Assembly: GCF_006345805.1 (NCBI RefSeq)
Contig: NC_043000.1
Location: 110,050,001-110,114,000 of the forward strand
From: Octopus sinensis
Taxonomy: Eukaryota
Reading direction: 5' to 3'
DNA: 64,000 nt
Positions 8,292 through 46,695 of this stretch are shown here, piece by piece. The translations under genes were made by a program, and so were the position numbers. The number at the start of each line of letters is the position of its first letter. Position 1 is the first letter of the stretch. The notes beneath the pieces were generated by a model. It did no database searches. It saw only the letters and a list, made by a program, of their open reading frames with translations, and had not been told where the DNA came from.

Positions 8292-8949
8292 CTGTAGAAG
8301 GTAAATTAAAATGTACGAGAGAATTTCTGACGTCACCTAGGTTTACTTCTTGTGTAAAAGCAGGTCATGTACGTGTGGTGTGACTTAATAACTATAAGGT
8401 ACCTGATTGCTTCTCTAAGGCATTTGGTACCTTGGGCCAGGTGTAGCAAACTCTATGTGCACTCAACACACAGATGTGTCTAGCACTAAGTCTGGTGATC
8501 AAAGAGAAGTCAAGGTTCTGTGGCTATTCAATATACAGTCCAGAGATTGTTGGCTCCCCCTGGAGTCTTGAATTCAGTCTCACTGCATTGGCACCTTGGG
8601 CGAGTGTGAACTACAGCTGTCAGGCTAGATTTGGTGGACCGCGTGTGTGTGTGTTTGTGTATTTAGGTCTCTTTGCCTTCACATCTTGTAACTGTTATAA
8701 ATGAATGCTATTCATTTCCAATATTCTGCAAAAACATGTCTGGTCGCAGGGAAATATCCCGTTGCTTGGAAACGGGTGAGAGTCAGTGGCAGGAAAGACA
8801 TCCAGTTGTAGAAAATGTGTCTTAACAAATTTCCTTCAACTTATGCAAGCATAGAAAAATGACATAACAACAAAGATGACGTGTGAATGATTCAAATATT
8901 ACAAAGCCATTAGCAAGGATTCAGCTTACGGCATTAGTAGAGAACATCT

Positions 8950-9177
8950 TATTTCTTTACTACCCACAAGGGGCTAAACATAGAGGGGACAAACAAGGAC
9001 AAAGTGATTAAGTCGATTATATCGACCCCAGTGCATAACTGGTACTTAATTTATTGACCCCGAAAGGATGACGGGCAAAGTCAACCTCGGTGGAATTTGA
9101 ACTCAGAATGTACAGACAGACGAAATACCACTTAGCATTTCACCCGGCGTGCTAATGTTTCTGCCAGATCGCCGCCT
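8950..9177 (-). mobile_element. SINE family B, alternative-tail variant
   Basis: Family B head and core with tail ...ccttgtgggtagtaaagaaata; same variant at 63551-63772. Confidence 0.85.
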
Positions 9178-9430
9178 TTGTATATAACATCTGGATAGAG
9201 TTTATTGAAGCAGATTTTCTACAGCTGGATGCCCTTCCTGTCACCAACAATTGCCGGTTTCCAATCACGGTATTATTTCTCCATGGCCAGACATGTTTTT
9301 TGCAGAATAATGGAAATGGATGACATTCATTTACAACATTCATGCAACGTCAAGACAAGGAGACACAAGCACACACATGCGATGGGCTTCTTTCAAATTC
9401 TGTTTACCACACAAACAATGCCACAAATCT

Positions 9431-9977
9431 TACCCAGGATATTAACTGTCTGGAAGCTGTTCAGCGACGTGCAACCAAGAGAATACCCTCCATCAGGCAT
9501 TTGCCATATTCTGAACGCCTTACTTCCCTGGGCATGGATACATTGAAACTGATGTCTGGCAGCTGACTTGGCAGACACCCATAAAATTATTAACAATCTT
9601 ACAAACAATAACTCTGAGTACCTTTTCAAACTCCACCTGTCTAACACCCGTGGACATGTTTACAAAGTCAGAAATCAGCACAGCTCCCATGACTTTAAGA
9701 AACATTTTTTCACGCCAAGAGTTGCTGGAGCATGTAACAATCTGCGGGCATCAGTTGTTAGTTGTCGGAGCACTGCATCCTTCAAAACCTCCATGCTTCC
9801 TGAGATTTGTCAACACTACACCTGATTTTCTCCCCTTCACACACACAAGCAAGCATGTATCTGACTCATACACTGTTCACTTCCCAGGCATTTGTATATT
9901 ACTGCATATGCTTTATACACACTTTTGACAAGTTGTGGGGCACCTGAGCACTGTATATAATAATTTCATTATTATTA
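9431..9977 (+). mobile_element. 5'-truncated CR1-type LINE, second copy with frameshift
   Basis: QDINCLEAVQRRATKRIPSIRHLPYSERL plus the same C-terminus and tail as 3823-4250. Confidence 0.9.
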
Positions 9978-10719
9978 CAGGAGCAGGGCTGACCAGCAAG
10001 TTACACAAAAGTAACAGTGCTCTCTATTGATCTGGCCCCCACCCTCAATATTGCCTTGAAGTGGAAGAAGGGTCTGTGTCAGATGAAGGGGAAAACTGGA
10101 ACAGCATTAAAGAAAAAAAAAAACAAGAATAGAAAAAGTAGAAAAAGGAAAATGAATCAAGAATTTACAGAGGGTTGATGAAAGAATATTTATAAAAGTA
10201 AAACTTAATTTTCACAATGTTATTTAAAAGACTTCCAGTCAAACATAACAAGAAAATTTTGTGTGTTTGTGTGTGGGGGGAGGGGTAGGAGGAGAGAATG
10301 GTGTTGGGTTGGATTTGTCACTTTTTTTTAAAAACAAAAATAAATTCTCAGAATAAAACAGAATTCTTGGGGAGAAAACAAGTGTTTTTACCAATATTTT
10401 TTGTGATAATATTGTTTATATAAATTTTATATATATGCATACATAAATATGAATTAGTGTATAACCAATAAACGTTTATAAATAATTTTAGACTGAGAAA
10501 GAACAATAAAGTCATCAAGCCATCTTGTGTGGGGCAAATATGGTATCATTAAATCCCCACTGACTTGGCACTGTTTTCTTGTGCAAATTAAGTATAGCAA
10601 GCAAAAGTTGCTCATCTCACCAGTAATCAAGAGGTAAATGGTTCTTTGTTCTTTTTCAACCTCAAATTAGCATTTACAAGTGTTTAGTGTTTAATATTAA
10701 AATCTTATGTTCATTTATT

Positions 10720-11274: not shown

Positions 11275-11557
11275 AAAACAATTTCAGCGTGGAAGGTGTT
11301 TATAAGCCATTTAAAAACACAAAATCCGTTAGATTCAGTTCAACATTTAAATTTAATTTGCCAAAACTTTTGTCACTTTGAGACCACTACCGGTTCACTG
11401 ACAAAATTCTGTGCTGCATCTCAATTTTGTCACTGAACAGGTCACGGTCTCAAAGCGATGAAAATATTTTGGCAAATTGAATTTAAATGTTGAAGTGAAT
11501 CTAACGGATTTTATGTTTTAAATGGGTTATAAACACCTTTCATGCTGCAATTGTTTT
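11275..11557. repeat. Foldback element, about 130-bp arms with a short loop
   Basis: aaaacaatttcagcgtggaaggtgtttataagccatt... pairs with ...aatgggttataaacacctttcatgctgcaattgtttt; centre gacaaaatt...aattttgtc. Confidence 0.85.
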
Positions 11558-11989
11558 CATTGCAGCACACGATCTCAGATCAGGTCATTTACTATGCAAG
11601 TACATCCCTGTAATTCTGAATATATATATATATATATGTATATACATGTGTACTATGTATTATATTTGTTTGGTTGTGATTAAATGACTGTGAAGTTTTA
11701 TTATGTAATATGAATATATCAATGTCTGTATACATTATGTTTAATTTGTCACACAAATCATGGAATGCGTATAAATGAAACAGCAGCTACTCCATTCCTT
11801 CCTTATATATTTGATGGTATGTAAACAGAAAAATGCTCATTGCAGCATCATGTTAGAAATGTGTCAGTCTTGTCTGATGCAAATAGGTTTATTGTTTTGG
11901 TAAGCCAGACAGGATTACACATCCCAGACCTAAAGAATTTGCAGACTCAACATTATTATGGCCAACAGTCGTCTCAATCTTGTACTCAC

Positions 11990-13021: not shown

Positions 13022-13380
13022 CAACATCAAAATAAATATCAAATAGAAATTGTAGTTGTGATCCCTGTGCCGGTGGCACGTAAAAAGCACCATCCGAACG
13101 TGGCCGATGACAGCGCCGCCTTGACTGGCTTCCGTGCCAGTGGCACGTAAAAAGCACCAACTGATCGTGGCCACTGCCAGCCTCCCCTGGCACCTGTGCT
13201 GGTGGCACGTAAAAGCACCCACTACACTCACGGAGTGGTTGGCGTTAGGAAGGGCATCAAGCTGTAGAAACACTGCCAGATCAGACGGGAGCCTGGTGCA
13301 GCCTCCTGGTTTCCCAGACCCCGGTCAAACCGTCCAACCCATGCTAGCATGGAAAGCTGATGTTAAACGATGATGATGAT
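13022..13380 (+). mobile_element. RTE LINE 3' UTR copy (3 hairpin cores)
   Basis: Closely matches 39893-40378 including gtgccggtggcacgtaaaaagcacc units and (GAT)n tail. Confidence 0.88.
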
Positions 13381-16139
13381 GAGGAGGTTCAAGGTAGTGA
13401 TGATTAATCTAACTGAAAAATGCTATGGTTTCTTTCTTTCAGGCAAAGAATGATGGTGTTGTTACACTCACAATTGCAAGAATGTGGTTTCAATTCCTGG
13501 ACTGGGTGGTTTGTCGTGTTCTTGAGCAAATAATTACATTTCATGCTGTTCCACTCCATTCAGCTGTAAATACATTGAAATGGTATCTTATTCCAAGGGA
13601 ATGATGTGAATTCAGACACTTATATGCCATGGAAATCGAGTAACCAGCCCCGAATTCTAGGACTCATGACATTAATATCCAAGGCTTCATGACAACAAAA
13701 GAATAAATTCCAAAAAGTCTGTTCTCTACTTTCCAAAGCATGAGTTTTTCCAAACTCACCAAATTCACAATATAATGTTTGCTGAGACAAACATCATCAG
13801 TTTCCTTAAACTCTGCTTATTATTATTATTATTATTATTTAAATGTAATAAACAATCGCAATATATATATATCATCATTTTAATGTCTAATTTTCCATGA
13901 TTCAAATGGGACAGATTTTCTATCACCATCCAAAACCTGTTTGCAAGCAAAATTATTTTTTTCTCTAATTTGGAGTTTTTCATGGAAGATTGCAAAGAAA
14001 TGACATCATTTGCATAATGGTGACGTTTGTTGACAAGTAGCATGTAATATCAAGTTAAGGAGACACATGCACACAACAGCACATGTATACCCTGCAGAAG
14101 ATAATATGTGAAAATGTCACTAAATGTCACAGAACCCAAAACCATGTGCTTGTAAAGCAAACTTCTTAACTACACAGCCGTTGCCACAGCAGTAACTCGA
14201 GGGCCTAGAATTTCATACCCAAGTCACTTGAGTTTAACAAATGCCTTCGCACAAAACTCTAAGCTCTCAAGTCACTCTTGTAACAATGGCAGCCAGTGAA
14301 TGATTTGATTTACTTTATGTGTTGAGCTCTCTCTTTCTTTTTCTGCCATTTGTAAGACTAAACGTATTTGTGTACGTGCACGCAGGCAGTTACGCATGTG
14401 TATACACACACACGTCTCTTATATAAAAAGATAACCATCCTGGGCCGGCGTTGCGTATCTTCTATTGTAGCCTTGGGTTGAGCAAGATCTTGTGAATAAA
14501 ATTTGGTTGAAGGAAGCTGCGTAGAAGCTCATCAGAGGGGCTGAACCACCTCTTGGATGGAAGAATTGTTGCCAAATTTAGCATCATGACATTGGTTCCT
14601 TTATCAGAGTCCATTCTTTTGCAATCATTGGGATCAGGTCACCTGCGACCAGCTTCGAAGTATTGTATTGGGTTCTTTGATAAATTAACTTATTTTCCCT
14701 TCCATTTAATTTAATCCTTTCCAATATTATTTGAATCAAGACAAAACATATTTTTATTATAGTGTTTTATGGAGGCTTTTTTTTTAAAACTCTATTCTTC
14801 CTCTCAAACTTTTGTTCATCAATTTTTGAAATTTGAATAAACTTTAGTTTTTTCAGAGTGCCATATAGAAATAGAAAAAAAAAACCATATGACTTTATGT
14901 GACAGCCCAATAAATTTTAAGCAAAAAACTGAAATATTTGTTTCATAAATAAATTGAAAATTTCTTCTGCTGTGTTCACTTGTCCAAGCAAAACAAACAA
15001 ACTGGTAGCAAAAAGCCTACACCTATTTCTTTACTACCCACAAGGGGCTACTGTTGTACATTAATTAATTAATAGAAACTTTTGTCTATTTCTCCTTCAA
15101 CATATCTTTTACTCATTTCAGTCACTGGATGTCTATGGCCATGCTGGAGCACTGCCATGAAGGATTCTTCATCATCATCTTTTAATGTCCGCTTTCCATG
15201 CTGGCATGGGTCGGACGGTTTGACTGAGGGCCGGCGAGCCAGAAGGCTGCACCAGTCTCCAATCTGATCTGGCAAAGTTTCTACAGCTGGATGCCCTTTG
15301 AGTTGAACAAATTGTCTCTGCTACTTTTTTTCTTCTTTAAAGCCTGGTATTTATTCTACTGGACTCTACTGCCGAACTGCTAAGTCACAGGGATGTAAAC
15401 AAACTAACACTAGCTGTCAAGTGGTGGAGGGGCAAACATACACAAAAGAGACTTCAACAGAATTTCTGACCATTGCATTGGTCAGCCCAGGGTTAAAGCT
15501 GACACCTGCTTAAGATGTGGGACTGACCCTGAAACCATGTGGCTGCAAAGCGAGCTTGATGACCACCCGACCCTGTCTGCACTGACCTCGTATATTTTAA
15601 CGAGATTGTTAAAACAATTTAAACAGCCTTCATTGATTATGGGACTTAATTCTATCAGCTTGATCTTTGCTGGAGAGTTGCTTTGCTTTTATCGAAGCAA
15701 AAAAGGCGCCAGGAAAGGTTTTGGTTAAACGGAATTCAGGTCTTTCTGGATGTTGTCCAGCCAGAGTCTCTTGCTGGTGGTGTTGCTGTTGTTGAGCATG
15801 GAGCACAGTAAGGGGGAGGGGTGAAGAGAGATGGAGAAAAAAAAAGATGTGAAGCAGGGAAAGAGAGCAGAGGAGGAGAGAGAAAATAAGGAAATGGTAG
15901 ACAACAATGAGAAAGAAGAATAAAAGAAATGAAAGGAGGGAGGAAATAAGGAAGACATGACAGCAAAGACATTTGATGAAAGTTAATAAAAAAGAAAAAG
16001 TCACATGAAAATTACAAAACATAAAATCTTATTTGACATTCTTTGGCAACGTTTGCCAGGGCTTTGCTGGGGCAATGCCCCCGTATGATGACTAAGTGTA
16101 AAAAACCAAAAACAAAATAAAAAAAAACAAATAATAATA

Positions 16140-16628: not shown

Positions 16629-17860
16629 GGGATCTTTTCTATTTTGAGGCCAGTTTTTTCAAATTTTTCCTACTGAACCAAACAATTTGAAACTTCGTAT
16701 ACTGGTAACGTTGTTTAATAATTAGAATTTTAACCAATGATATTCCGTCATTCGGCTTTATTTTATTTACTCCGTCTCGACCACCAATTTCGTGACGTAT
16801 TTAACATCTTAAATGTAAACAAGCTATAGTCAGCCACCTTCTAATAACAAAAGTTTGTCTTTGAAGTTACCGTCTAGGGGAAGCATTGATGTACATGTGT
16901 GTGTGTGTGTGTGTTTGATGGGGTGTGGGAGACAGTATGTTGTGTAAGTGAAGTGCTTCTGTTAGTGTGTGTGAAGAGACAGAGAGAGTAATGTGTGAAA
17001 GAGAGAGATAACTGAAATTTTTTACTCGGTGTATGTGTATATGTATGTCTGCATGTATGTGTGTGTGTATGTATGTGTAAGTATGTGTGTGTATGTATGT
17101 GTGTGTGTGTATGTATGTATGGCCGATTCATCGTAATTACGATGAATCGGCCATACATACATAGATACATACACACACACACATACACTCATTCATACAT
17201 ACACCGAGTAAAAAATTTCAGTTATCTCTCTCTTTCACACATTACTCTCTCTGTCTCTTCACACACACTAACAGAAGCACTTCACTTACACAACATACTG
17301 TCTCCCACACCCCATCAAACACACACACACACACACACATGTACATCAATGCTTCCCCTAGACGGTAACTTCAAAGACAAACTTCCCTCGTCATAAAATC
17401 GCTTCCTCTTGGTCTCTTTCGCTCTCATTACTTATGTAAAAAAATAAAAGTTTTTTACGGAAATTGACGGAAAACTTGTGCTACGACAAGCGAAACTTCG
17501 CCGAAATTTAATATTAAAAAAGCAAAGAGCTGGCAGAAACGTTAGCACGCCGGGCGAAATGCGTAGCCGTATTTCGTCTGCCGTGTTTGTTTACAGTTTT
17601 CCGAACGTTAGTACGTCACAAAAGCGCTTTCTACGTCACACTAATAGAATGCAGTCAAGTTTTACACATGAAAACAAACAATCTGATTGGTTAAAATTCG
17701 CAGTTTTAATCTACGATTAAAGTCATAAAATAGATTTTTCTCAAATAAACTAGTTCCAACCTGTGTCTTGTTTTGCTAGACTCTATCAGCATACGAAGTT
17801 TCAGATTATTTAGTTAAGTAGAAAGATCTGTGGTCCTGGCTTCAGAATAGAAAAGATCCC
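16629..17860. repeat. Older diverged inverted repeat enclosing the palindrome (arms about 16629-16822 and 17585-17860)
   Basis: gggatcttttctatt(t/c)tga(g/a)gccag, tgaaacttcgtat(a/g)ctg, gaattttaaccaat and gtgacgta...tgtaaacaa occur in mirrored order on opposite strands. Confidence 0.75.
16851..17384. repeat. 534-bp palindrome with no spacer
   Basis: Arms identical in unique sequence and differing only in microsatellite parts; centre gattcatcgtaa|ttacgatgaatc between 17136 and 17137. Confidence 0.95.
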
Positions 17861-19839: not shown

Positions 19840-20106
19840 TTACATCTGTTTTGTCGCGTTCAGCTGAAGATGACCCTGAGAAGCTTTTGTGAGTATAAAT
19901 GGTCCTGAAGGAATTATGATATTGTTGGAGGTGTTCACTTTGAGGTTTTTGGTGCCGCTAGGTGCAACTGTTGGTGCCGATATTGTGTTTATCTTTGTGG
20001 TTGGTGAGCTGACTGACTGAGACGTTGCCATGATGCTGGGAAATGTCTGTGACTGAAGTGTTGAAGGAATGGCCGTGCTCTGAAGTTGGACTGCTTGCAT
20101 TCTTAC
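19840..20106 (-). CDS. ZMYND8: ZMYND8 probable last coding exon ([14 protein letters not shown]...[10 protein letters not shown])
   Basis: ctcctttatatttcag acceptor, 267 nt open to TAA at 19842-19840. Confidence 0.75.
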   Translation of the reverse strand, partial: VRMQAVQLQSTAIPSTLQSQTFPSIMATSQSVSSPTTKINTISAPTVAPSGTKNLKVNTSNNIIIPSGPFILTKASQGHLQLNATKQM

Positions 20107-26208: not shown

Positions 26209-27206
26209 TGACATAAAAAGCACCCAGTACACTCTTCTAAGTGGTTGGCATTAGAAAAAGGATCCAGCTGTAGATATTTCTCTGGAGTTGTTCTTCCATG
26301 GTTTCACAAGGCCCATGGAAGGATTTAAACATAGCAGGGTTCCTCTTTGTTGCAAGAATTCAGACCAGGTCTTGTGTCCAACAATAACTCCCTCCCTTGT
26401 ATCCACCAGTCTTGGAGGAAGTCCTGATAACATTACAAAAACTACATTCCATTCTTGATATTTAAAAAAATTAAAAATCCTCATTTAACCCTAATTCTCT
26501 CATCATGATTCTATCAAGCCTATTGATTATTGTAGAGGTGTACTTGCACAGCAAGTGTCCTGATCTGAGATCAAATGAGGAAAGTCAAGTGATTTGCAGA
26601 GTGGAAGACATAAGTAAACTGTTCAGAAACATACAAAAACTGATAACTTTTGATAGTCCTTGAGTGTTTCTAAATGGTTAGCTTATGTCTTTTAAGACAC
26701 TGCAATTGTTAGAGATTATTTTTGCTAACAAAGAATTAGACAAGTGTTTACTCACATTCAGCGTCTCAACAGATCGAATCTCTGGCAGTTGTTGCGCTGC
26801 AGCTGTTACAGGTTGTTGTCGCATGGTGGAGATGACAATCGGCGCAGTTGTGCTCGTCGTGTTGGGTAAGGCATCATTGAGGACAATCATATTCTGTGGG
26901 TTTCCCGTCATCAATGTACCAGAAAGCGTGGTTGTTGGTGTTGTTGTTGTCGATAACGCTGCTGCTGCTGCCGATACTGTGGCCGTTGTGGCCGATGCAG
27001 ATGGAGTGGAAGGCAATGTATGGGTCGCTGTGGGCTGCACCGTTGAACTGGTTGTCTGAGACAGTTGTTGCGTACAGCTGTTCATGTGCTGAGGCCAGTG
27101 GTTGGCCTGGCATTGGTAATCACAGTAACTGGTGTTCCAGCAGCAATACAGCAGGGCTTCTTTACTGCAGTTGGCACACTAAACACAAAGAACAAAGAAC
27201 ACTATA

Positions 27207-27245
<39 letters not shown>

Positions 27246-30200
27246 TGCCTGATGCAGTACCAGGCAGTGGCTCTCATGGCTTCTGATCTTAACTGATTGG
27301 AAGTGTTATCATGTACATTGTTTTGTCTTGGTATAAAAAATGGGCTACAGCAAATATTCTGCTCAATACCACAGATTTGCTTGTCAGTTGTTTGACCATA
27401 ACCAGTTCAGCATGTCCCTTAGCGGCTGATGATATGTGCATCTCTGATCACGAGCAGAAGTAGTGGGGGAGCATCATAGCTGTGTGTTGAGAGGGATTCT
27501 TTGGGGTTTGAATAATTCACCTCTGGAAACATGGGTGTTTCGTTCAACATCCTTAAACAACCCTTATTCAGGGACCTTTCGAGTGGGATGGGTTACTCGA
27601 CCTGAAGAAAATTCTAATTGGGCCCCACCTGCAAGATCATGTGCTGTTTATCTTGATATGAGATCACCATGTTGTGCACATATGGTTGTGATGCATGTGC
27701 CTAGTGTACCCTTATCAGACGGGTAGTCATGATGGGTATATTGGGCTTCGTATATTTTACCCCAGTGTCACTTTGATGGCATGCACTGCTCTCTCACTCA
27801 ATAATAATAATAATAATAATAATCCTTTCTACAACAGGTACAAGACTTGAAATTTGGTTAGGAGGAGGACAGACGATTACATCAACTGTAGTACTCAACT
27901 GGTGCTTATTTCATCGACCCCGAAAGGATGAAAAGCAAAGTCGGCCTCAGCTGAATTTGAACTCAGAATGCGAAGACAGATGAAATACCGCTAAGCTTTT
28001 TGCCCAGTACGCTAACAATTCTGTTAGCTCACCTTAATAATAATAGCAACAACAACAATATTGATGATGATCATCATCATTTCCACTAAAGGCACAAGGC
28101 TTGAAATTTGTGGGGAGGAGAGTAGTCGATTACATTGGCCCCAGTGTTTCACTGGTACTTATTTTATCAACCCCGAAAGGTTGAAAGGCAAAAGCTGACC
28201 TCAGCAGAATTAGAACTCAGAATTCTTTTTTCTGGTTCTTTGCATTCAATGCATTTTGTCCAATGTGCTAATGATTCTGCCAGCGCAGTCTTAATAATAA
28301 TAATAATGATGATAAGGAGGAGGAGGAGGGTGCAGGCATGTGTTTGCATTTAAAAGAGTGCATTGGGATGTTAGCTGGGGATGCATTCAAAGAAACTCAA
28401 GCCTTTTTGAGCCTTTTCCATGATGTACTTGCAGCCAGCTTCATGCCTGAATGACTTCATTGTCTGTTGATACAAGAAACAGTTTTGTCCTGGCGTGTGA
28501 CTGGCTGTGAGTACACATCAATGAAATTGCCCTAAAAGGACCGAAAGGCTCTGTCATTCTTACTGGCTGCTGCTGCTGGGCCAGTTTTTTGTATCTCTCC
28601 AATATTTATTGCTTTTAATGCAGCAAATCCATAAACGATGTTATCTCAGGACAAATAACACAGTAATTGGCCTATCAATGGTGTATACACGTCAAGAATG
28701 ATACACAGACGGCTATTTTAATTAATGTTTTACTTGCCTAGATTAATCAGGATGCTGAGAATTAAATGTTATGACAGATACAGCACAATAACACCAATGA
28801 CAGGAGGTAATTTAGCAATTCTTTGACTGGTTGTCTAGCACCATATGGACTCGACCATCTGTTGCTTTCATGCAGTGAAAACGTATAAAAGAAGTGAATG
28901 GGACAAAAGCAAGGCTAAGCATACCCATTGTTTCTTCTTTGTTTCCTCAATGGATTTCATCTTTTCAATATCACATTGTTCTCTGATCGAGGAAGCAAAA
29001 CGTTCTTTCTCATTTTCCCAACTTGCTCGTATCTCTGCCACAGTCAGATCTGAGGAAACAAAAACAGATTCACTCAACAATTACATTTAGAAAACACACA
29101 CACATAATAATAATAATAATAATAATAGTAATGATTTCTCATATACATAAATACATAATATCCATCTATCTATATATATATATGCACAATTAGTACATGG
29201 AATTAATGCTAGACATTAAAACTGGAATAAATTAATTTCTACTTACTTAGGTTATGTTTAATTTCTGCAATTTCCTGTTCATGGATCCATCGAAGTTTCT
29301 CAAGCTCCTGATGGTAGTGTTTCATAATGATCTAAAGAAATAAGAAGAATTAAATAACAAGGAATCTTTACTTCATGACAAGGTGTATGAAGGATGAAAA
29401 AAGGATTTTGTCAAAATGCTGGTAATGGTAATGGAGTAAAAAATACCTGTCAAACTAGGTAGCTGTGTTAATCTGAGCAGTGGTTGGATCGTTGTTGCCA
29501 TCATTATTCTTTAATGTCCATTTTCCATACTGGCATCTGTTGGATGGTTTGACCAGAGTTGAGAAGATCAGGAGCTTTACCAGGTTCCATTGTCTGTTTT
29601 AGCATGGTTTCTACAGCTGGATGCCAACCACTTTACAGAAGGTACTAAGGGGTTTTTTATGTGGCACCATCACCAGTGCTTTTTACATGAATTAAATTTT
29701 TAATCATCTCAGGTTGAGATAAAATTTCGTTTTTGTATTTGCAAGGTTTTTGATGTGAACAGGATTCATTGCAACAGATTTTGCTGATTGTTAGGAGGGT
29801 CATTATGCTAACTAAAAGTGGGCATGTCATTGATGAGGTCACAAAAGGTGGTAAAAGGGCTTTGACAAACCTGATTCAGTGATTAATAGAACAATTAATA
29901 AAAGAATCAGTTAATTAGTTATTTGGTAAAAATTATTAACCAATTGACTAACAATAATAAAAGTGAAACAGAATCAGTGTGTGTGTGTGTGTGTGTTTAT
30001 TATAGGCAAAATGACCCTCCCAAGATACAAGGAAATACAGATACAATGTACTTCCAAGTGAAGATAAATAGAAGAGCCCAACTTTAAAATGAGAATATCT
30101 GTTTTTGGACACAGCATGCTATGGGAAAGTCCATTTGAATGGTTTTCCTATTGCCTTCTTTAGTTAGACCAGAATCTCAGGACTAATGACACAAGTGAAA

Positions 30201-31701
30201 GGAATAACTAGATACAGGAACTGAAAGCAACTTGGAGACTTGTAAAACGTATCTTTTGTTTTATGGGACAAACTACATCAGCAGAATAAAACTGAAATAT
30301 CAATTACAGCATGGGAGATACATATTCACGATTTAAACACACAAAGACTATTAAGTTCACTTACACATTTATTATTTGTTGTCCAAATTTCCATTGCATC
30401 AGCTGCAACCTGGTTACTGATGTGGTTTCACTACAACACTGTGACCAGGCCACAGAAAGAGTGACAAGAATTCTGACATCAAATGATGAGTGTCTGAATA
30501 AAGTTAACAGTCTTTGTGTTTTTTTGAATGGCTGATCTGTGCCTGCCAATGTTGTGATTGTTTTAGTTTGAACATGAGAGTCTCAAGATCAAATTCCTTA
30601 CCAGGCTCCAAACTTAAGAGGAAACTAAGATTCAGGAAACAAGAATTAAATTATAGTAAGGAAAAAAAAAATGTCAGCCAAGCAACATTCACCACACAGG
30701 GCAAAGAAAGACAAACTGTCTGAGTTCAGTTTCTTTTTATTTACTCTATTTGATAGAATATAAAACACTTTTTTCCCCACAAAAAATGTCTTTGTCCTAA
30801 TTGTAAATTTTGACCAATATTACTTTAATACAGTAAGAAACCTTTTTTTCTCTGGAATATGTGCTGCTGGAATTGGGGTGGATTTAATATGTCCAGGCAT
30901 CAAACTAGGTAACTGATAAATGAAAGCAGATTTCCTTAGAGTGTGAAATAGGAACAATTTAGAGAGATTAACATTTAGCTTAAATTCTTGAAAATGAATG
31001 ATTCACAGAACTGACCAATCAAATGTTTATTGAACTGTATTAAGACAATATTCAGATTTGATATGTATGAAATTGGAGCAAAATACTGTGAAAGTAAAAA
31101 TATCTGTTAATGTGTTTGGTTTTTATTTTGTTTAGGTTAAAGTGCAATAATTAGCTCCATAAAACAAGTTATCCCACCTTAGTCAACAAATTCTCAAAAT
31201 TGTTTTATTTAAATATCATCAAATACAAGTTCACAAAAATTATTGATTCCTTTTAACAAGATATAAAGTAAATTTTTACAGATAAGTGGATATGGTTAAT
31301 TGAACTGTTGTCAATAGATTACCAGTATTTATCTTATTGGTCCTGGGGATTTCTATCCACAATGCAGAGGAATTCAACTAAATATTGTAAAGTATTTATT
31401 TAGTCAGGCAATCTTCTGCCTCTTCCAACCCACAGCCTACCACCTTTATTGAATGCATGATTCACGTAAATAAATGTTCAATGCAGCTGAACAATCTTAC
31501 CTGATGACTATGTTTAGTCAACATGTCAGCATACATTTCTTCAAATGATTCTCGAATGCTCTTTGATAGCTAAAGGAATTAGAGAGAAACAAAATATTGA
31601 AAATTTCAGAGAAAAAAATGAATAAGTTTTAAAGAACTTTACAAACATTAATTTTATACAAGAATAATTTTTAAACATAAATAGTGGTTTTGTCTCTAAT
31701 A

Positions 31702-31759
<58 letters not shown>

Positions 31760-31997
31760 CATATGTGGGCACAGGATGTCATGAAACAGGTGCAACAAAA
31801 AAAATACAAAGTACGAGTGCACAGAATATGAACTATTTTTTCGAACAATGAAAGACACAAATGGAAAACAAGACAAACAACATAAAGAACGACCGTTATC
31901 AGTTGTTGGCTGTTTTTCTACTCTTGTATTTCGAGCATTTAACAATATTCATATTTTTTATTGTACATGTTTCATGACGTCCTGTGCCCAAATATGC

Positions 31998-32056
<59 letters not shown>

Positions 32057-35000
32057 ATATGACTGAACACCATGCAACCTCTTCCAAGTAAGTTTTATAT
32101 ATATATATACATACAGAGAGAGAGGGAGAGAGAATTTTTGTAACCCATTTGTTGATAAATGAAATTCCCAACCTTAAAACCTTCTGGAAAAAAGATGCTG
32201 AAAATTAGATTCGTCCCTGTTTATATTTTCGCTCAAGATTGTGAGGACAAAATACAAACTATATACAACATTAGTCGCTTATGTTGAATATTGATGAAAC
32301 CTCCATACTAAGAAGGTTTCTTATTCCAAAATTCCCAAAGTTATAACATTTAATACTATACATGACATATATATTGAGTAAAACTTGTGAAACTGTCTCA
32401 TATACAGACTGATACATTTGATAAGTTATTTTTCCAACAGAATAACCTCAAACATCTCTGATCATTCTGTTTGTTTTCAATTATTGTGCAAGCTGGCACA
32501 AACGTTAGCACGCCGGGCGAAATGCTTAGCCGTATTTCGTCTGTCTTTACGTTTTGAGTTCAAATTCCACCAAGGTTGACTTTGCCTTTCATCCTTTCAG
32601 GGTCGATAAATTAAGTACCAGTTACGCACTGGGGTTGATCTAATCGACTGGCCCCCTCCCTCTTGTGCCTAGAGTAGAAAAGAATTATTGTGCATAATAC
32701 TTTGGTCTTGCTACTCTACAGAATCCTTCCCCAAACAACACGTGAAATACATTTCATAAACCAAAAAGGTAGGGCAACCTTCTGCAATTCTCTTGAGTGC
32801 AATGGCCCCAATTTATTTAGTTGAGCAATCAGTACGTCTGGGGTTTGTTGCAAATCAAGAAATTCATGTTTTAACAGTCAACTGAAAAAGCTTAACCCTT
32901 TTAACACGAAATCACTTGTGATCCCCCCAGGGTCTGTGGTATGAAACTTCTTATTTTCCAAGGGGGTGTAGTTCACCAGAAATGAATTAAATACATACAA
33001 GAAAAAATAAATTCTCTCAAAAAACCTCACCTGTTTTGTGTATTTCTCAACCATTTGGTTGATTTCGATTGGTCGGCTAGCATCACTCCTCATGGCAGCT
33101 GAGTTTTCTCCAGGTTTATTCTTTAAGAGTCCAAGAAGAAGAGTTGCATCCGTCACAATGGAAGGAAGAGCCAGATTCGAACTTTCACTAGAAAAAAGAA
33201 AAAACAACAACAAAAGGAATAAAATAACAGATTTAAATATTTAAATGCAGAATTGCAAAATAAAATGGTTGGTACTGATTTGGCTTCAAGAGAAACTCAA
33301 TCCTTTCATGAAGTCCAAAGCTTCCAAAAGGCAACGTAAAACCATTCTACCCTTTACTGTGGGGTGTCTGTTGTTCCAGTTATTGGACCCTGCTCATGAT
33401 GGGGGACCAGCTTGAAGAGTTTTGGCAAAGAAATCAGCTCCAGAACTTATTTCTTAAGATTGCCACTTATGCAATCAGTGTCTTGTCCAATTGAACACTA
33501 AATTACAGGGATATAAATAGACCAACACTGGTTCTCAAGAGTAAAGAAGCCATGAATTTGTAGTGAGGAAATAAAAAGACCGTCATACCACTGGTATTTT
33601 ATAAATTACTCAGGTATCAATAATAGTAGACTAGCATCTCCCAGTACGGGTATGTCAGTTGTGTAATACAGGTACACAAGCCTTTACAGGTGTATAATAC
33701 AGCTTATCAACCATAACAAATACCAGTGATTTCAAATTTTGGCACAAGGCTTGCAATTTCGGGGGAGTTGGGTAAGTCAATTACATCAACCCCAGTGCTC
33801 AACAGGCCCTTATTTTATCGACCCCTGAAAGCATAAAAAGCAATGTCAACCTCAGTTGAGTTTGAACTCAGAATGTAAAGTGTTGGATGAAATGTCACTT
33901 AGCATTCTGTCTGACATACTAACAATGCTGCCTCACAGTACAGTATAATAATGAGTCCCAGACAGTTCAATACACAGGTCATAACAATTGGAGAGTAAAG
34001 TTCACTGGTTACAACAAGACTTCATTTCAATACACTGACCATAACAAGTATACAGGACAGTGCATCAATTAGGACAAGCGGATGGTTGAATATGGGGGCA
34101 GTAACAAGCATACAGTACAATGCACCAATCATATAATAAAGTGAAAGAGCACAACAGGGTTAAGGGAACACAAAACAACATACTCTGTGGTAGATTTGCT
34201 GTCACCGTTCTTATTTCCTGCAGAAGTCGATGTATTTGTCTTGGCAGCGGTTTTCCTGCCAGTGTTGCGTACACTGCTGCCTGCGTTAGAATTCAATCCA
34301 GGATCAGAGACCTGTAGGTCAACAGAACCCTTATCTGTTGTCTGTTGATTCATCGTTGGTACAGAAACCTGTTTCTGCATTTTGGCAAGGGGTCGGAATG
34401 CCGACATCTGAGAATCACTAAGGTTTCGGAGGCTGGTATTTTTCTTTGGTGGTGAAGACAATATTAACGATAATTGATTGTTTCCTGTCACCGATAAGGT
34501 GTTGTTAGGTGTGGAGCCTGGCTTATCTGAAACAAAGTTAGGGTTTATATAGAAATAGATTTAACGAATTTATATAACATGATCAGGTTACACAATTTAT
34601 GAAAGCTTTTGCATAATGACATAATAGCTGATTAATTAGGGGCAACAGATAATTGAATGTTTAACTGTTCATATCCTGTCCAACCTCTCTATTGTTTTAT
34701 GTATATGACCAAGAGACTTAACACTCAAACAGTCCAGTCCACTTAGCTCACGGGGGGAGTACAGCATGCCAGAGCAATACATCAACATAATCAATAACAA
34801 CACTATAAAACTGATCAATACTGCCAAGTCACCAATCAAAATTTGCAACAGTTTATTACTAGTACTTATGAGACTGTCACCTTAAGAACAAGAGAAATGG
34901 GAAATGTGATGTGGCTATGGACATTTCGTAGGTTAGACAGTGACATAGCGAGAGAGAAAGAGAGAGACAGTGTGTGTGCTGTCTGGGGTAGCCCTAGAGC

Positions 35001-38000
35001 TCTCCCAACTTTGGGTCCCAAAGCCTGTACAGGCTTATACAGCAGACTCAAATTAGCAGTTTCACACACCATTATCTTCAGTTTATGGCGTTAATGTTTA
35101 CAGACTTAAAATTTGACCTACCTTTCCTTTGGTTGCTCGAATTTTCATTGTTTTTCATCAAGATACTGTCAAACCCAGCATTGGGTTTCAAAATTCTTCC
35201 AGCTTTTAGGTAACCGTGATTGACATTTGTGGTGTCTTGGATAGGTTTTGGTGCCAAATTCACATAAGATTTCATGTGTGATATCAAATTCTTATCAATT
35301 GGTGATTCTACTTCTTGTTTTATTTGGTGTAGTTGAACCATTTTTCTTTTTGGCATTAAAGGCATATGAGAAGGTGCACGAGATTCAGAACTTTCTAATT
35401 CAAGACCAGGTTCCGTTTTGATATTCTTTAACCGGTTATCGATTCCATTTGCAAACACTTTGTCCTCAATTTCTCCAACACTTTCCATACACACTTTCAC
35501 AGGACTCTTGTCAGAAGACAAGTCAGAATCGCTGCTGGGAAAGAAAACACCTGGACACGCCCGCTTTTTAGGTAATATTGATGAACTGTATGATCTTTTA
35601 AATGGTTTTGTTGGGGCTTTATTAGGGATCGGTTTTGTTGTGAGTGCTGTGGTTGTTTTTGTTGTTGTGATGCTGGCAGTTGGTGTGGCATTAAATGGAC
35701 ATGATGTTGTGATTGTGGTGGTGGTTCCAACGGCAGCAGAGATTGCTGCCGTCGTGGATGATGGGTGAGACGAGATTGATGTAAATGATTGGGAGGTGGA
35801 AAATGCTGATGATGATGATGAAGAAGAAGAAGAAGAAGGCATGGAAGATGACAATGAACTACTGACTGTCGTAGACTGCAAAGTTTGAGTGGGTTGGGTG
35901 GAAGCTGCGGTGGAGGTCAGCTGTAACATTTTCATCATTGCACCACGACGTGTTGTGATGATGCTGCTGTATTTGTTTTTCACAGCAGAAGCAGTCTTTG
36001 TAATCACAGATACCTTTTCAGACATCTTGCTATCTGAAGATGTGCTTTTACTACTACTACTACTACTTGAAGATTTACTTGAACTTAGTGAACTGTTGTT
36101 CTTTTTAGAATTTGCTTCGGAACTTTCCGGACTTTTAGTTCTTTTTGGAGAAGGATGCAGCTTTAAAGATTTAAGTTTTGAAGATTTCCCATTTTTGATA
36201 TATGGACTGTTGCTGTCGTAGAGTGAACGGAATGGATAAAACTCAAAAGTTCCAAACTTTTGCCTAAAATAAACAAAAAGAATATAATTAAGTAAAATAA
36301 TGAAATTTTTGTCAAATGTGGACAGTTTTTCGTTTTATAATTTAATTTTCATTCAATTTTCTTTGCATAAATCTATCAATACTTAATCCTTTTGAAAAGG
36401 CTAATTCTCAAAGACCCACCAGACTCTGACAGCTTTAACACACCCACAATACGGCATGAAATTGGAGGAAATCTCTTCATATTCTCGGCCAACATATATT
36501 CCTGTTATCTTTCTCCACTAATTATTATTCTGATAATTATTCCAATAATCACTCCAATATTCACATAATTACTTCAACAGTATCAAACACAGAATTATTT
36601 CGTTAATTTCCTTATCAGATCTCACACACTACACACACACACACACACACATTCTTTTCTTCTTTTACTTGTTTCGGTCATTTTGACTGCGGCCATGCTG
36701 GAGCACTGCCTTTTAGTTGAAGAAATCGACTCCTGAACTTATTCTATTGGTCTCTTTTGCCAAACTGCTAAGTTACAAGAACATAAACACACCAACATCA
36801 GTTGTCAAGTGATGGTGGCAGGGACAAAAAAACATAAATACTTACACACACGTGTGTGTGTGTGTATGTATAAGATGGGCTTCTTTCAGTTTCCATCTAC
36901 CAAATCCTCTCACAAGGCCTTGGTCGGCCTGAGGCTATAGTAAAAGACACTTGCCCTTGGTGCCACGCAGTGGGACTGAACCTGGAACCATGTGGTTGGA
37001 AAGCAAGCTTCTTACCACACAGCCACACCTGCACGTATATGTATATATTCCATACAATTAAGCACATGTTTATCTAAATGCTTAAGTTTCACAAGCTTTA
37101 TATTTTCAATGCTTGACTCCAACAAAAAACAAAATAGCAAAAGGCTTTAAAAGTAAAATTATCAAAACAAAAACAAGAATAAACAAAAAAAAAAGCAAAA
37201 ACAATCACAAGAGTGGCAAGTGTCTTCTATTATAGCCCTGGGCCGATCCAAGCCTCGTGAGAGGATTTGATAGACAGAAACCGAAAGAAGTTTGTCATAT
37301 AAATGTGTGTATGTTTTTGTGTGTCTGCGTTTGTTACCCCATCATCGCTTGACGACTGATGTTGGTGTGGTTATGTCCCTGTAACTTAGTGCTTCAGCAA
37401 AAGTGACCGATAGAATAAGTACTAGGCTGACAAAGAATAAGTCCTGGGGTCGATTTGTTTGACTTAAAGGCGGTGCTCCAGCATGGCCGCAGTCAAATGA
37501 CTGAAACAAGTAAAAGAACAAAAGAATAAACCCATACCTGTATTTTTCAATGTATGTCTTCAGTTCAGTCATAGAATGGTCAAAACCACTTCTTTTGGAC
37601 TTCATCACTGTTGGGCACTCTTTGGAATACAAATACACTTGAGAGACAGGAACCCAAGATCTAAAAGAACAAGAGAACAAGAGAATTTATAAAGAATGGC
37701 AGAAACTAAAGACTGAAGGACCAATAAGGTGAAACTGTAGCTTAAAACCCATTAAGTCCCAGAGTTCTCAAATTTCTGAATATTACTTTTAAATTTGTAC
37801 AGATGATTGAGAATAGGTTAAAATGAAAAAAAAATAACTATTAAAACTCCTTTACTTCAAGTAGAAATGGAAATACTCGGTGTCCTATAAATAGGACACT
37901 GAGACAATGTGATTATAGCTTATTTAATGTTCTCATTTAGGGTCCTATTTATAGGACAGTGGGACTTAACGGGTTAAGCAATATTGTTAAGTACATCAGC

Positions 38001-42000: not shown

Positions 42001-42208
42001 AAACTAGGACTGGCATGTAATGTTGGCAAACAATCTTTACTCCAAAGTACTGTTGCTGAATATCTCTCATTGTGGGATTTATAAATAGTAATTTTCTAAG
42101 GAAACAGAGTTTTTGTGAAGTCTATATCTTACTCAATAAAAGACATAAAGGCAATGAAATGGATTGAGTGGAAATTGGAAGAAGGTTGTGGATATGCTTT
42201 ATTAAAAG

Positions 42209-45200: not shown

Positions 45201-46695
45201 CCATCGATTTTTGCCAAACCACTAAGTGACAGGGAAGTAAACAAAAGACATACACACACACGTATATATAGGCACAAGATGGGTTTCCATACAGTTTCCG
45301 TCTACCAAATTCATTCACAAGTCACTGGTTGGTTTCAGCTAAAAAAAAAGGACACTTGAACAATGTAACATGCAGTGGGATTGAAACAGAAACCACTTGG
45401 TTGCAAAGTGGGTTTCTGAACCACACAACCATCCCTGTGCCTATACACACACACGCACATATATATATGTATATATTCTTTGCTTCAGTTATTTGACTGC
45501 AACCATGCTGGAGCACTGCATTTAGTGGAACAAGTTGACTCCAGGACTTATTCTCTGTAAGCCTAGTACTTATCCTATCAGTCTCTTTTGCCGAACCGCT
45601 AAGTTACGAGGAAGTAAACACACCAACATCGGTTGTCAAGCGATGGTGGGAGGACAAACACAGACATACAAACATATTCAACGAGCTTCTTTCAGTTTCC
45701 ATCTACCAAATCCACTCACAAGGCTTTGGTTGGCCCAAGACTATAGTGGAAGACACTTGCCTAAAGTGCTACACAGTGGGCTGAGAAGCAAGCTTTTTAC
45801 CACGCAGACACACACACACACACACACATATACATACAGGGATGGTAAATGATGATGATAATCATCATCACACACACATCTAATTACAGATTTTTCTGAA
45901 ATGCTGTTCCCCAAAGAAGAAAAATGGCCTTGAGAGCTATGGTGTGGGTGGAGGTGGGGAACTCCTAATGGGTCACTCATCCTACTAAAAATAATACCTA
46001 AATTTCCCTCAAAGCATCCCCTGCAGAGTTAAAAAAACCCCAGATATGATGGTCATGGCTGGAACATTTTTGATTACTGGCTAAGTGAGAGGGAGCTGAT
46101 CTGGGCCTAAACAACAACCACCAAAAATATCAATTCTTTAGCAGCAAAAAAGATGTCCCTAAAATATTAACTGAATGATTAACAAAACAAAAAAAAAAAA
46201 ACCCCAAAAAACCCCAAAAAAACTTTTGCCATAAACCTGAAAGAAGAACCATGAAACTAACCTTTTCAACTGTGTTCAGATCCATTGGATGGTAAATAAA
46301 ATCATGGTAATTGGGTACCGCACATAAATCTACTGGTTGACGGAATGGAGAACTCTGGAAAATGGAACAGAAAAAAGAAACAACATCAATAATAATAATA
46401 ATTACTACGAAAGGCCTGAAACTTGGGAGAAGGAGGCCTAGTCAATTAGGTCAACCCCAGGGTTTCACTGGTATTAATTTATCAACTCTGAAAGGACGAA
46501 AGGCAAAGAGGACCTTGTCGGGATTTGAATTCAAAACGAAAGGATGGATGAAAGGTCACAAAGCATTTTCCCTGGCGTGCTAACAATTCTGTCAGCTCTC
46601 CACATTAATAAACAACAATAATAATAACAATAATAATAATAATAATAATAATAATGATGATGACGATAATAATAATAATAATAATAATAACGATG

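What the first reader, a model, noticed from the sequence alone, without database searches (positions are those of the whole stretch)
16851..17384. Zero-spacer 534-bp palindrome with identical unique arms but diverged microsatellites
About 180 bp of unique sequence is identical between the arms and the centre (ggccgattcatcgtaa|ttacgatgaatcggcc) has no loop, yet the embedded GT/GTAT tracts differ clearly between arms. Spacerless palindromes of this size are normally unstable (cruciform extrusion and cleavage). Persistence suggests recent formation, arm-to-arm gene conversion or a hairpin-ended replication or transposition intermediate. It lies just past the ZMYND8 3' end, so read-through would give an about 250-bp hairpin RNA, a potential Dicer or ADAR substrate.
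Basis: partly seen in the sequence, partly recalled or inferred. Interest (0 to 1): 0.75.

Follow-up and report, generated by a model that had tools for sequence, protein, structure and literature searches.

The report
Inverted duplication of a transposon remnant
The 534-base palindrome is real, but its arms are not unique DNA: they are a recent back-to-back inverted duplication of a broken copy of a small octopus transposon (a MITE) lying downstream of ZMYND8, which makes it an ordinary kind of rearrangement.

Summary
The palindrome is at exactly 16851-17384, with its centre at 17136|17137 and no spacer. The arms are 286 and 248 nt. All 213 non-microsatellite positions are identical between the arms. 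The arms differ only by one CA unit and by a GT/GTAT tract of 73 versus 33 nt.

The arms are transposon-derived. A translated arm hit an Octopus vulgaris "hypothetical protein". Its 20-kb locus (L002, not orthologous to the window) carries three canonical copies of a MITE of about 310-400 bp. These copies have 80-90-nt terminal inverted repeats, one clear 8-bp target duplication, and a single arm-equivalent each.

In the window, family homology runs from the right arm straight through the palindrome edge (17384|17385) to a decayed right terminal repeat ending at 17502. The left arm's homology stops dead at 16851. The left terminal repeat is missing. Both arms share 16 nt of non-family sequence at the centre and at least 5 private changes.

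The palindrome is therefore a recent local inverted duplication of a truncated old MITE copy, followed by microsatellite slippage. The mechanism (template switching or fold-back repair) is inferred, not shown.

It lies about 2.5 kb downstream of the last ORF-supported exon of a minus-strand ZMYND8-like gene. Transcription, small RNAs, genome-wide copy number and read support could not be tested. Interest is low.

The parts
16851..17384 (.). The whole spacerless quasi-palindrome (534 bp), centre at 17136|17137.
   Evidence: Fold z-scores -49 (RNA) and -44 (DNA).
17137..17384 (+). Right arm (248 nt), the parental sequence. It consists of 16 nt of non-family flank (17137-17152), an (ATAC/AC)n tract, and 188 nt of MITE body.
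   Evidence: Family homology continues past 17384 without a break. Positions 17385-17433 are about 96% identical to O. vulgaris copy 2.
16851..17136 (-). Left arm (286 nt), the derived inverted copy of 17137-17384.
   Evidence: Homology to the family and to the right arm stops abruptly at 16851. The flank 16800-16850 matches nothing in the family. The arm shares at least 5 private changes with the right arm.
17110..17163 (.). Perfect 54-bp central palindrome (27 nt per arm). It includes the non-family 16-mer GGCCGATTCATCGTAA and its complement.
   Evidence: The 16-mer has no significant similarity to the family (score 7, shuffle mean 7.4).
17037..17109 (+). Left-arm GT/GTAT microsatellite, 73 nt. 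This is the heterologous segment.
17164..17196 (+). Right-arm AC/ATAC microsatellite, 33 nt, the partner of 17037-17109. It corresponds to the roughly 21-nt (ATAC)n tract of canonical copies.
17164..17502 (+). Remnant of the parental MITE copy: microsatellite, body and decayed right terminal inverted repeat. The repeat spans 17427-17502, carries a 21-nt internal deletion, and ends ..CTTCGCC. The left terminal repeat is absent.
   Evidence: BLAST of O. vulgaris copy 3 (positions 79-404) against window 17183-17504 gives 78.7% identity. The left terminal repeat (TIR-L) finds nothing anywhere in the window.
17503..17510 (+). GAAATTTA, the would-be 8-bp target-site duplication at the MITE's right end. 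No partner lies nearby, because the left end is lost.
   Evidence: It is read by analogy with the perfect 8-bp duplication GTATTATT of O. vulgaris copy 2.
17528..17580 (+). 5' head fragment of a tRNA-like SINE family with at least 8 other copies in the window. Here it is cut off at its 3' side.
16629..16823 (+). Left arm of an older, diverged inverted repeat (about 75-80% identical, with indels) that encloses the whole structure. It begins GGGATCTTTTCTATT.
   Evidence: (E = 1.8e-10).
17586..17860 (-). Right arm of the older inverted repeat.
19843..20106 (-). Last ORF-supported exon of the ZMYND8-like gene. The acceptor is ..tttcag| and the stop codon TAA is at 19840-19842.
   Evidence: Whether this is truly the last exon is inferred.
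27074..27178 (-). MYND zinc-finger exon of the ZMYND8-like gene.
   Evidence: Pfam PF24324 MYND_ZMYND11_ZMYD8, E = 7.9e-10. Coordinates.

Best explanation
The palindrome is a locus-specific, evolutionarily recent inverted duplication of part of an old, already damaged transposon copy.

Proposed order of events:
1. A non-autonomous DNA transposon (a MITE of about 310-400 bp in its O. vulgaris copies, with 80-90-nt terminal inverted repeats and an 8-bp target duplication in one clean copy) inserted inside the loop of an older inverted repeat downstream of ZMYND8.
2. This copy lost its left terminal repeat, so non-family sequence (..TTACGATGAATCGGCC) came to abut its internal (ATAC)n microsatellite.
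3. A 248-nt stretch (16 nt of that flank, the microsatellite and 188 nt of MITE body; 17137-17384) was copied in reverse complement immediately to its left with no spacer. This gave the layout A-B'-B-C with no target-site duplication.
4. The two microsatellite copies then drifted apart by slippage and error-prone repair, while the non-repetitive parts have not yet picked up a substitution.

Steps 2 and 3 may have been one event. The most likely mechanism (inferred, not shown) is a replication template switch, or fold-back priming at a break next to the microsatellite followed by end joining.

The element has no demonstrated function. If it is transcribed as part of a long ZMYND8 3'UTR or by read-through, it would fold into an interrupted hairpin of about 250 bp, which is a plausible ADAR substrate.

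It persists because it is young, and because only the central 54 bp are strictly symmetric. The 73-versus-33-nt heterology would block branch migration of a cruciform.
For: Shown directly:
- The arms derive from a repeat family. Translated arm 17199-17393 hit P0002, an O. vulgaris 'hypothetical predicted protein'. Its locus L002 (OX597841.1, 2997581-3017883) shares only repeats with the window, and its one Pfam-annotated neighbour gene is caspase-like.
- L002 holds three copies with different flanks, each with terminal inverted repeats and one arm-equivalent. Copy 2 has a perfect 8-bp duplication, GTATTATT.
- The two boundaries are asymmetric. Family homology crosses 17384|17385 and runs to the terminal-repeat tip at 17502, but stops at 16851 on the left.
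- The left terminal repeat is absent from the window.
- The 16 nt beside the centre are non-family sequence, yet they occur in both arms. This requires duplication rather than two independent insertions.
- Both arms share at least 5 private substitutions or indels against all L002 copies, and differ from each other only in microsatellites.
- The arms are 89-93% identical to other copies but 100% identical to each other.
- There is no target-site duplication at 16850/17385.
- There is no other copy of the arm or the centre in the 64-kb window.

From the literature:
- Template switching creates perfect inverted repeats in a single event (PMC7954356; 10.1101/2023.04.19.537475).
- Cruciform extrusion depends on palindrome length and central symmetry (PMC1851657).
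Against: - No ancestral or orthologous single-arm allele was available, so the duplication mechanism and any junction microhomology are inferred.
- Genome-wide counts of the palindromic form could not be made. Two metagenome scans found nothing. The protein-based routes gave only one O. vulgaris locus.
- Template-switch events described in primates are short-range, with the template within tens to hundreds of nucleotides of the mutation cluster (PMC7954356). The 248-286-nt copy here lies at the upper end of that range.
- About 3 substitution-like differences fall in the microsatellite against 0 in 213 other positions. This needs either microsatellite hypermutability or consensus errors in the assembly.
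- Read-level support for the assembly was not checked.
Confidence: 0.62

Rival explanations
1. The palindromic form is a multi-copy element in its own right: a foldback-type derivative subfamily of this MITE, or a segmentally amplified unit. On this reading the window merely holds one ordinary copy.
For: The arms are TE-derived. This window holds six other short full-length palindromes that occur only once in it, at 41756-42045, 55205-55420, 55510-55841, 48590-48727, 11311-11522 and 31685-32072. Several of them have TTA..TAA ends. O. vulgaris is reported to hold many TIR and MITE families (PMC13282606).
Against: There is no target-site duplication and no TA/TTAA-type end at 16851/17384. The right palindrome edge lies inside continuous family sequence rather than at an element end. 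All three O. vulgaris copies seen are canonical single-arm elements. No second copy occurs in the 64-kb window.
Confidence: 0.12
2. The palindrome is an assembly artefact. A fold-back or chimeric long read, or a consensus error in a repeat-rich and microsatellite-rich region, created an inverted copy that does not exist in the animal.
For: The window has no gaps, which suggests a long-read assembly. Microsatellite tracts are where long-read consensus is weakest, and the only differences between the arms lie there. Read data could not be examined.
Against: A simple fold-back read gives A-B-B'-A', not a 534-bp insert with different, continuous flanks on both sides. An artefact built from one molecule would not differ by 40 nt between the arms while being error-free over 213 other positions. 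The right arm is continuous with bona fide family sequence, and the left flank belongs to an older inverted repeat whose partner lies beyond the right flank. The surroundings are therefore collinear.
Confidence: 0.1
3. Two separate copies of the MITE inserted head-to-head. Copies 2 and 3 of L002 are such a pair, inverted and 1.1 kb apart. The two copies were later brought together by deletion and homogenised by gene conversion.
For: Inverted pairs of this family at short range do exist (L002 9903-10265 on the plus strand and 11409-11812 on the minus strand). Gene conversion between palindrome arms is well known elsewhere, for example in the human Y-chromosome palindromes (own knowledge).
Against: Both arms carry the same 16 nt of non-family sequence at the centre, which independent insertions would not share. 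No family sequence lies beyond 16851. No terminal repeat of either copy sits at the centre.
Confidence: 0.04
4. The palindrome is a functional hairpin-RNA locus: an endo-siRNA or miRNA precursor, or a regulated ADAR target, kept because of what it does in the ZMYND8 3' region. This does not exclude the duplication origin.
For: On the minus strand, which is the sense strand of ZMYND8, the sequence folds into a near-continuous hairpin of -427 kcal/mol. The TG/CA core gives sub-threshold Rfam hits to mir-297, mir-466 and MIR9555. Cephalopods edit RNA extensively (own knowledge: Liscovitch-Brauer et al. 2017).
Against: All Rfam hits are far below the gathering scores (57-60 bits against 90-119), and they only reflect a generic TG/CA hairpin. 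Four AATAAA signals lie between the stop codon and the palindrome. Dicer processing of long dsRNA was elusive in molluscs (PMC12479628). With 0 substitutions and no comparative data, there is no sign of selection.
Confidence: 0.05

Closest known systems
Inverted repeats made by template switching or fold-back repair (four-point template-switch model; quasi-palindrome-to-palindrome conversion)
   Same: A single event gives a perfect inverted copy next to its template. There is no target-site duplication, the flanks differ, and the event is specific to one locus (PMC7954356; 10.1101/2023.04.19.537475).
   Different: The described primate events are short-range, within tens to hundreds of nucleotides (PMC7954356). 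Here 248-286 nt were copied with no spacer, at the upper end of that range. The ancestral allele is not available, so the switch points cannot be read.
MITE-derived hairpins (complete MITEs whose terminal inverted repeats fold back; the known source of some miRNA and siRNA precursors, e.g. Made1/mir-548 - own knowledge)
   Same: The hairpin is built from non-autonomous DNA-transposon sequence and lies near a gene.
   Different: In those cases the stem is formed by the element's own terminal repeats. Here one terminal repeat is lost, and the stem is a secondary inverted duplication of the internal body plus 16 nt of flank.
Human palindromic AT-rich repeats (PATRR11, PATRR17, PATRR22)
   Same: Near-perfect, spacerless palindromes of several hundred bp (about 190-600 bp). 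Size and symmetry are polymorphic, and asymmetry near the centre stabilises them (PMC1851657).
   Different: This palindrome is not AT-rich. It is 36-41% G+C, like the window's 38%. Its arms are TE-derived and GT/CA-skewed. No evidence of breakage or translocation is available.
Drosophila-type hpRNA loci and the mouse mir-297/466 TG/CA-repeat hairpins
   Same: A long inverted repeat would give a long dsRNA hairpin. The core resembles the TG/CA-repeat miRNA hairpins.
   Different: No transcription or small-RNA evidence exists. The Rfam scores are well below threshold.

Membership tests
MITE / foldback transposon (the 534-bp palindrome itself as a mobile unit) | Terminal inverted repeats at the ends of the unit | tested here: met
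   Trivially met, because the whole unit is an inverted repeat.
MITE / foldback transposon (the 534-bp palindrome itself as a mobile unit) | Target-site duplication flanking the unit | tested here: not met
   The flanks are ..CTAATAACAA | CCCTCGTCAT... There is no direct repeat and no palindromic TA/TTAA end. The right edge lies inside continuous family sequence.
MITE / foldback transposon (the 534-bp palindrome itself as a mobile unit) | Several copies with different flanks | tested here: inconclusive
   There is one copy in the 64-kb window, and none of the palindromic form in the 20-kb O. vulgaris locus. The whole genome was not searchable.
The MITE family seen in O. vulgaris L002 (membership of the right arm plus flank, 17164-17502) | Sequence homology over body and terminal repeat | tested here: met
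   79-93% identity to three copies. The alignment runs from the microsatellite to the TIR-R tip.
The MITE family seen in O. vulgaris L002 (membership of the right arm plus flank, 17164-17502) | Both terminal inverted repeats present | tested here: not met
   TIR-L is absent from the window, so this is a truncated copy.
The MITE family seen in O. vulgaris L002 (membership of the right arm plus flank, 17164-17502) | 8-bp target-site duplication | tested here: inconclusive
   Copy 2 has a perfect GTATTATT. Copy 3 is decayed (7 of 9). Copy 1 has a 43-55-bp direct repeat instead. In the window only the right site, GAAATTTA, remains. The superfamily (hAT, Merlin, MULE or P-like) is undetermined.
PATRR-like palindromic AT-rich repeat | Near-perfect palindrome of several hundred bp without a spacer | tested here: met
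PATRR-like palindromic AT-rich repeat | Strongly AT-rich, especially at the centre | tested here: not met
   G+C is 36-41% across the arms against 38% for the window.
PATRR-like palindromic AT-rich repeat | Hot spot of breakage or translocation | not testable with these tools
   Needs population or somatic rearrangement data.
miRNA precursor families (mir-297, mir-466, MIR9555) | Score at or above the Rfam gathering threshold | tested here: not met
   60.2 against 119, 57.2 against 90, and 47.3 against 85 bits. Nothing reached gathering threshold in the whole window.
hpRNA / endo-siRNA locus | Long inverted repeat able to form a long dsRNA hairpin | tested here: met
   -427 kcal/mol, z = -49.
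hpRNA / endo-siRNA locus | Transcribed, and yields phased 21-22-nt small RNAs | not testable with these tools
Template-switch / fold-back inverted duplication | A-B'-B-C layout: the copy is adjacent to its template in reverse complement, the flanks are unique, and there is no target-site duplication | tested here: met
Template-switch / fold-back inverted duplication | Ancestral allele with one arm, and microhomology at the switch points | not testable with these tools
   No orthologous or ancestral sequence was obtainable.

The most novel reading that the evidence does not exclude
The inverted duplication turned a dead MITE remnant into a hairpin of about 250 bp that is co-transcribed with a long ZMYND8 3'UTR. 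It would then act as a hyper-editing (ADAR) or dsRNA-sensing target that modulates a chromatin-reader gene in the octopus. It would be a freshly born, TE-seeded regulatory hairpin caught before any substitution.
Probability: 0.05. Interest if true: 0.5.

Novelty: new member of a known kind. Interest (0 to 1): 0.2.

Why it matters
It matters only modestly.
- It is a clean, datable example of how a transposon remnant next to a microsatellite can be converted in one step into a long, near-perfect hairpin-forming sequence beside a gene. Such sequences are raw material for dsRNA, ADAR substrates or fragile sites in a repeat-rich cephalopod genome.
- It gives two practical warnings. Arms that look unique in a 64-kb window can still be TE-derived. 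At least one annotated O. vulgaris "hypothetical protein" (P0002) is simply an ORF read through a copy of this MITE.

Tried and rejected
Searches that found nothing useful:
- Exact-ORF look-ups of the two ORFs that cross the palindrome, and of a 315-aa ZMYND8 exon, found nothing on record.
- A homologue search with the 315-aa exon gave only a 40%-identical ORF on an ENA metagenome contig. That contig (L001) is a distant cephalopod's orthologous ZMYND8 region. It is too diverged and does not reach the palindrome.
- P0002 used as a query, in both the homologue search and the representative library, found only itself plus one low-complexity hit. No further family copies could be fetched.

Ideas tested and dropped:
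- Tested whether the 16 nt at the centre derive from the MITE's terminal repeat or its internal A/T palindrome. The resemblance seen by eye is not significant, so I dropped it.
- Tested whether the flanks 16745-16850 and 17385-17527 are diverged partners of the arms. They are not.
- Looked for a target-site duplication at the inner and outer boundaries. There is none at the inner boundary. At the outer inverted repeat there is only a weak AAAAG, offset by one base.
- The apparent inverted repeats at 36682-37497 and 8656-9375 are only inverted pairs of multi-copy SINEs.

Tools that do not apply here:
- The bacterial-type promoter/terminator scan and ARAGORN are uninformative for an animal genome.

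Full report
**1. Observation**

The sequence at 16851-17384 is a spacerless palindrome, exactly as described. The quoted centre, GGCCGATTCATCGTAA|TTACGATGAATCGGCC, lies at 17121-17152 and occurs once in the window. No shuffle produced a match.

Aligning the left arm (286 nt) with the reverse complement of the right arm (248 nt) gives the following blocks:
- Two perfect outer blocks: 16851-16895 <-> 17340-17384 (45 nt) and 16896-17036 <-> 17197-17337 (141 nt). They are separated only by one extra CA unit in the right arm.
- A perfect 54-bp core at 17110-17163.
- Between them, a GT/GTAT tract of 73 nt (left) against 33 nt (right), with 4 indels and about 3 substitutions.

As single strands the region folds at -427 kcal/mol (RNA, minus strand, z = -49) and -282 kcal/mol (DNA, z = -44).

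**2. Context**

The gene upstream is a ZMYND8-like gene on the minus strand. Pfam finds these domains in successive exons:
- PHD, 49776-49850
- bromodomain, 46277-46345
- PWWP, 40537-40599
- ZMYND8 coiled-coil, 28925-29047
- ZMYND11/ZMYND8 MYND finger, 27074-27178

The last exon supported by an ORF and a splice acceptor is about 19843-20106, with its stop codon at 19840-19842. The palindrome therefore begins about 2.46 kb downstream on the transcribed strand.

Four AATAAA signals on the minus strand lie between the stop codon and the palindrome, and two more lie just after it. Whether the palindrome is in a long 3'UTR or in intergenic DNA cannot be decided here.

Rfam finds nothing at gathering threshold in the whole window. 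A permissive scan gives only sub-threshold hits of the TG/CA core to the mir-297, mir-466 and MIR9555 hairpins.

**3. Surroundings**

The palindrome sits inside an older, diverged inverted repeat. Region 16629-16823 pairs with 17586-17860 at about 75-80% identity with indels.

Between the palindrome and the right outer arm lie 143 nt (17385-17527) and the 5' head of a tRNA-like SINE (17528-17580). That SINE family has at least 8 other copies in the window.

The window also holds six other short full-length palindromes that are single-copy within it. Several have TTA..TAA ends, as expected of MITEs. The palindrome studied here differs from them in three ways: it has no such ends, it has no target-site duplication, and its arms are 100% identical.

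**4. The turning point**

Within the window the arm has no other copy. However, the translation of the right arm (17199-17393) hit a 100-aa "Hypothetical predicted protein [Octopus vulgaris]", P0002.

The locus that encodes it is L002 (GCA_951406725.2, OX597841.1, 2997581-3017883). It is not orthologous to the window. It shares only SINE, LINE and arm-family repeats with the window, and its one Pfam-annotated neighbour gene is caspase-like.

L002 contains three copies of one element, at about 1721-2029, 9903-10265 and 11409-11812. The canonical structure, read, is:
- a left terminal inverted repeat of about 80-90 nt (GGCGATCTTTCGTCTCTAGTAGACC...GAAGTAAT);
- a short (ATAC)n tract;
- a body that equals the window's arm (CCGAGTAAAAAATTTCAG ... 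GACGGTAACTTCAAAAGAACTT), continuing with CCCTCGTCATAAAATCGC...CGCTCTC;
- the right terminal repeat.

The three copies have different flanks. Copy 2 has a perfect 8-bp target-site duplication (GTATTATT). Each copy contains one arm-equivalent only. None is palindromic in the way the window's element is.

**5. Reading the window against the family**

- Homology between the right arm and the family does not stop at the palindrome edge. It runs through 17384|17385, where the next 50 nt are about 96% identical to copy 2. It continues to a decayed right terminal repeat whose tip is at 17502.
- The left arm's homology, both to the family and to the right arm, ends abruptly at 16851.
- The left terminal repeat is found nowhere in the window.
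- The 8 nt after the right tip (GAAATTTA) have no partner nearby.
- The 16 nt between the centre and the microsatellite are not family sequence (score 7 against a shuffle mean of 7.4). Yet they occur in both arms.
- Both arms share at least 5 private substitutions or indels relative to all three O. vulgaris copies, and differ from each other only in microsatellites.
- The arm is 89-93% identical to the O. vulgaris copies. Those copies are 92-97% identical to one another. The two arms are 100% identical to each other.

**6. Interpretation**

The right arm and its flank are a left-truncated copy of an old MITE. The left arm is a secondary, inverted, spacerless copy of 248 nt of it. That copy includes 16 nt of non-family flank, which excludes two independent insertions.

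With 0 differences in 213 non-microsatellite positions, the 95% upper bound on arm-to-arm divergence is about 1.4%. This is several-fold less than the divergence among family copies. The duplication is therefore much younger than the family, and gene conversion need not be invoked.

If mutation were uniform, the chance that all 3 substitution-like differences fall within the roughly 50 aligned microsatellite columns is about 0.01. This fits microsatellite hypermutability, or consensus noise in the assembly.

The mechanism is inferred. The layout (a copy adjacent to its template in reverse complement, unique flanks, no target duplication) is that of a template switch or of fold-back priming at a break (PMC7954356; 10.1101/2023.04.19.537475). 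A break beside the (ATAC)n tract could also account for the loss of the left terminal repeat.

Neither palindrome boundary is a transposon terminus, so a transposase hairpin intermediate is not indicated.

Persistence is unsurprising. The element is young, and only 27 bp per arm next to the centre are strictly symmetric before a 40-nt heterology. In PATRRs, cruciform extrusion and instability depend on length and central symmetry (PMC1851657).

**7. Rivals**

- A multi-copy palindromic subfamily cannot be excluded without a whole-genome search. It is disfavoured by the absent target duplication, by the right edge lying inside family sequence, and by 3 of 3 canonical copies elsewhere.
- An assembly artefact is disfavoured because both flanks are distinct and collinear, and because the arms differ by 40 nt in one tract while being error-free elsewhere. 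Reads were not examined.
- A functional hairpin RNA is untested. A mollusc small-RNA survey found little evidence for Dicer processing of long dsRNA and suggested editing instead (PMC12479628).

**8. Copy number (rough inference only)**

Leaving out the two ascertained copies, 2 further copies were seen in about 84 kb of Octopus sequence (the window plus L002). This hints at a mid- to high-copy family. However, copies may cluster, and the sample is tiny.

**9. Verdict**

The striking "unique" arms are a rearranged transposon remnant. This is a new instance of a known kind of event, and its interest is low.

Noticed in passing
window 16629-16823 and 17586-17860: An older inverted repeat (about 75-80% identical, with indels) encloses the palindrome, the MITE remnant and a SINE fragment. 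It begins GGGATCTTTTCTATT. A weak AAAAG direct repeat lies at both outer ends, offset by one base. It is possibly an old foldback or MITE whose centre received later insertions.
   Followed up: partly
window 41756-42045; 55205-55420; 55510-55841; 48590-48727; 11311-11522; 31685-32072: Six other short full-length palindromes of 138-388 bp. Spacers are 0 to about 145 nt, ungapped arm segments are 85-96% complementary, and each is single-copy within the window. Several end TTA..TAA or TTAA..TTAA, as expected of Tc1/mariner-type or piggyBac-type MITEs.
   Followed up: partly
window 17528-17580; also 32491, 63764, 9170, 42443, 59769, 28030, 46916, 7334: A tRNA-like SINE family (head GCTGGCAGAAACGTTAGCACGCCGGGCGAAATGC..., then GAGTTCAAATTCC...) with about 10 copies in 64 kb. 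The copy beside the palindrome is only a 53-nt 5' head, which is unusual for a retroposon and suggests a later deletion.
   Followed up: partly
window 13250-13382 and at least 15 other sites; 36682-37497: A second high-copy short repeat family. The apparent 800-bp inverted repeat at 36682-37497 is just two inverted copies of a further multi-copy repeat.
   Followed up: partly
window 39173-39802 (+): A 209-aa ORF inside a ZMYND8 intron, with no Pfam hit. The surrounding 1.2 kb (39194-40369) is 76% identical to L002 15913-17121, so it is a dispersed repeat. By eye it looks like a LINE reverse-transcriptase C-terminal fragment.
   Followed up: partly
L002 1668-1710 and 2023-2065: O. vulgaris MITE copy 1 is flanked by a 43-55-bp direct repeat (95% identical) instead of an 8-bp target duplication. 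This is either an unusually long duplication or a local tandem rearrangement.
   Followed up: no
L002 10001-10303 (P0002): The annotated O. vulgaris 'hypothetical predicted protein' P0002 is an ORF read straight through MITE copy 2, covering the (CA)n tract, the body and the right terminal repeat. It is almost certainly an annotation artefact. Its only significant relative in 1.84 billion representative proteins is itself.
   Followed up: yes
L001 (ENA ERZ21867824, ctg104790l): A contig in a metagenome assembly carries an orthologous ZMYND8 region of a distant cephalopod. It has collinear patches of 81-89% identity and shares no SINEs with the window. This is host DNA inside a 'metagenome'.
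   Followed up: partly
window 17082-17204: The TG/CA-repeat core of the palindrome gives sub-threshold Rfam hits to the mouse TG/CA-repeat miRNA families mir-297 and mir-466 and to MIR9555. The resemblance is generic hairpin similarity, not homology.
   Followed up: yes
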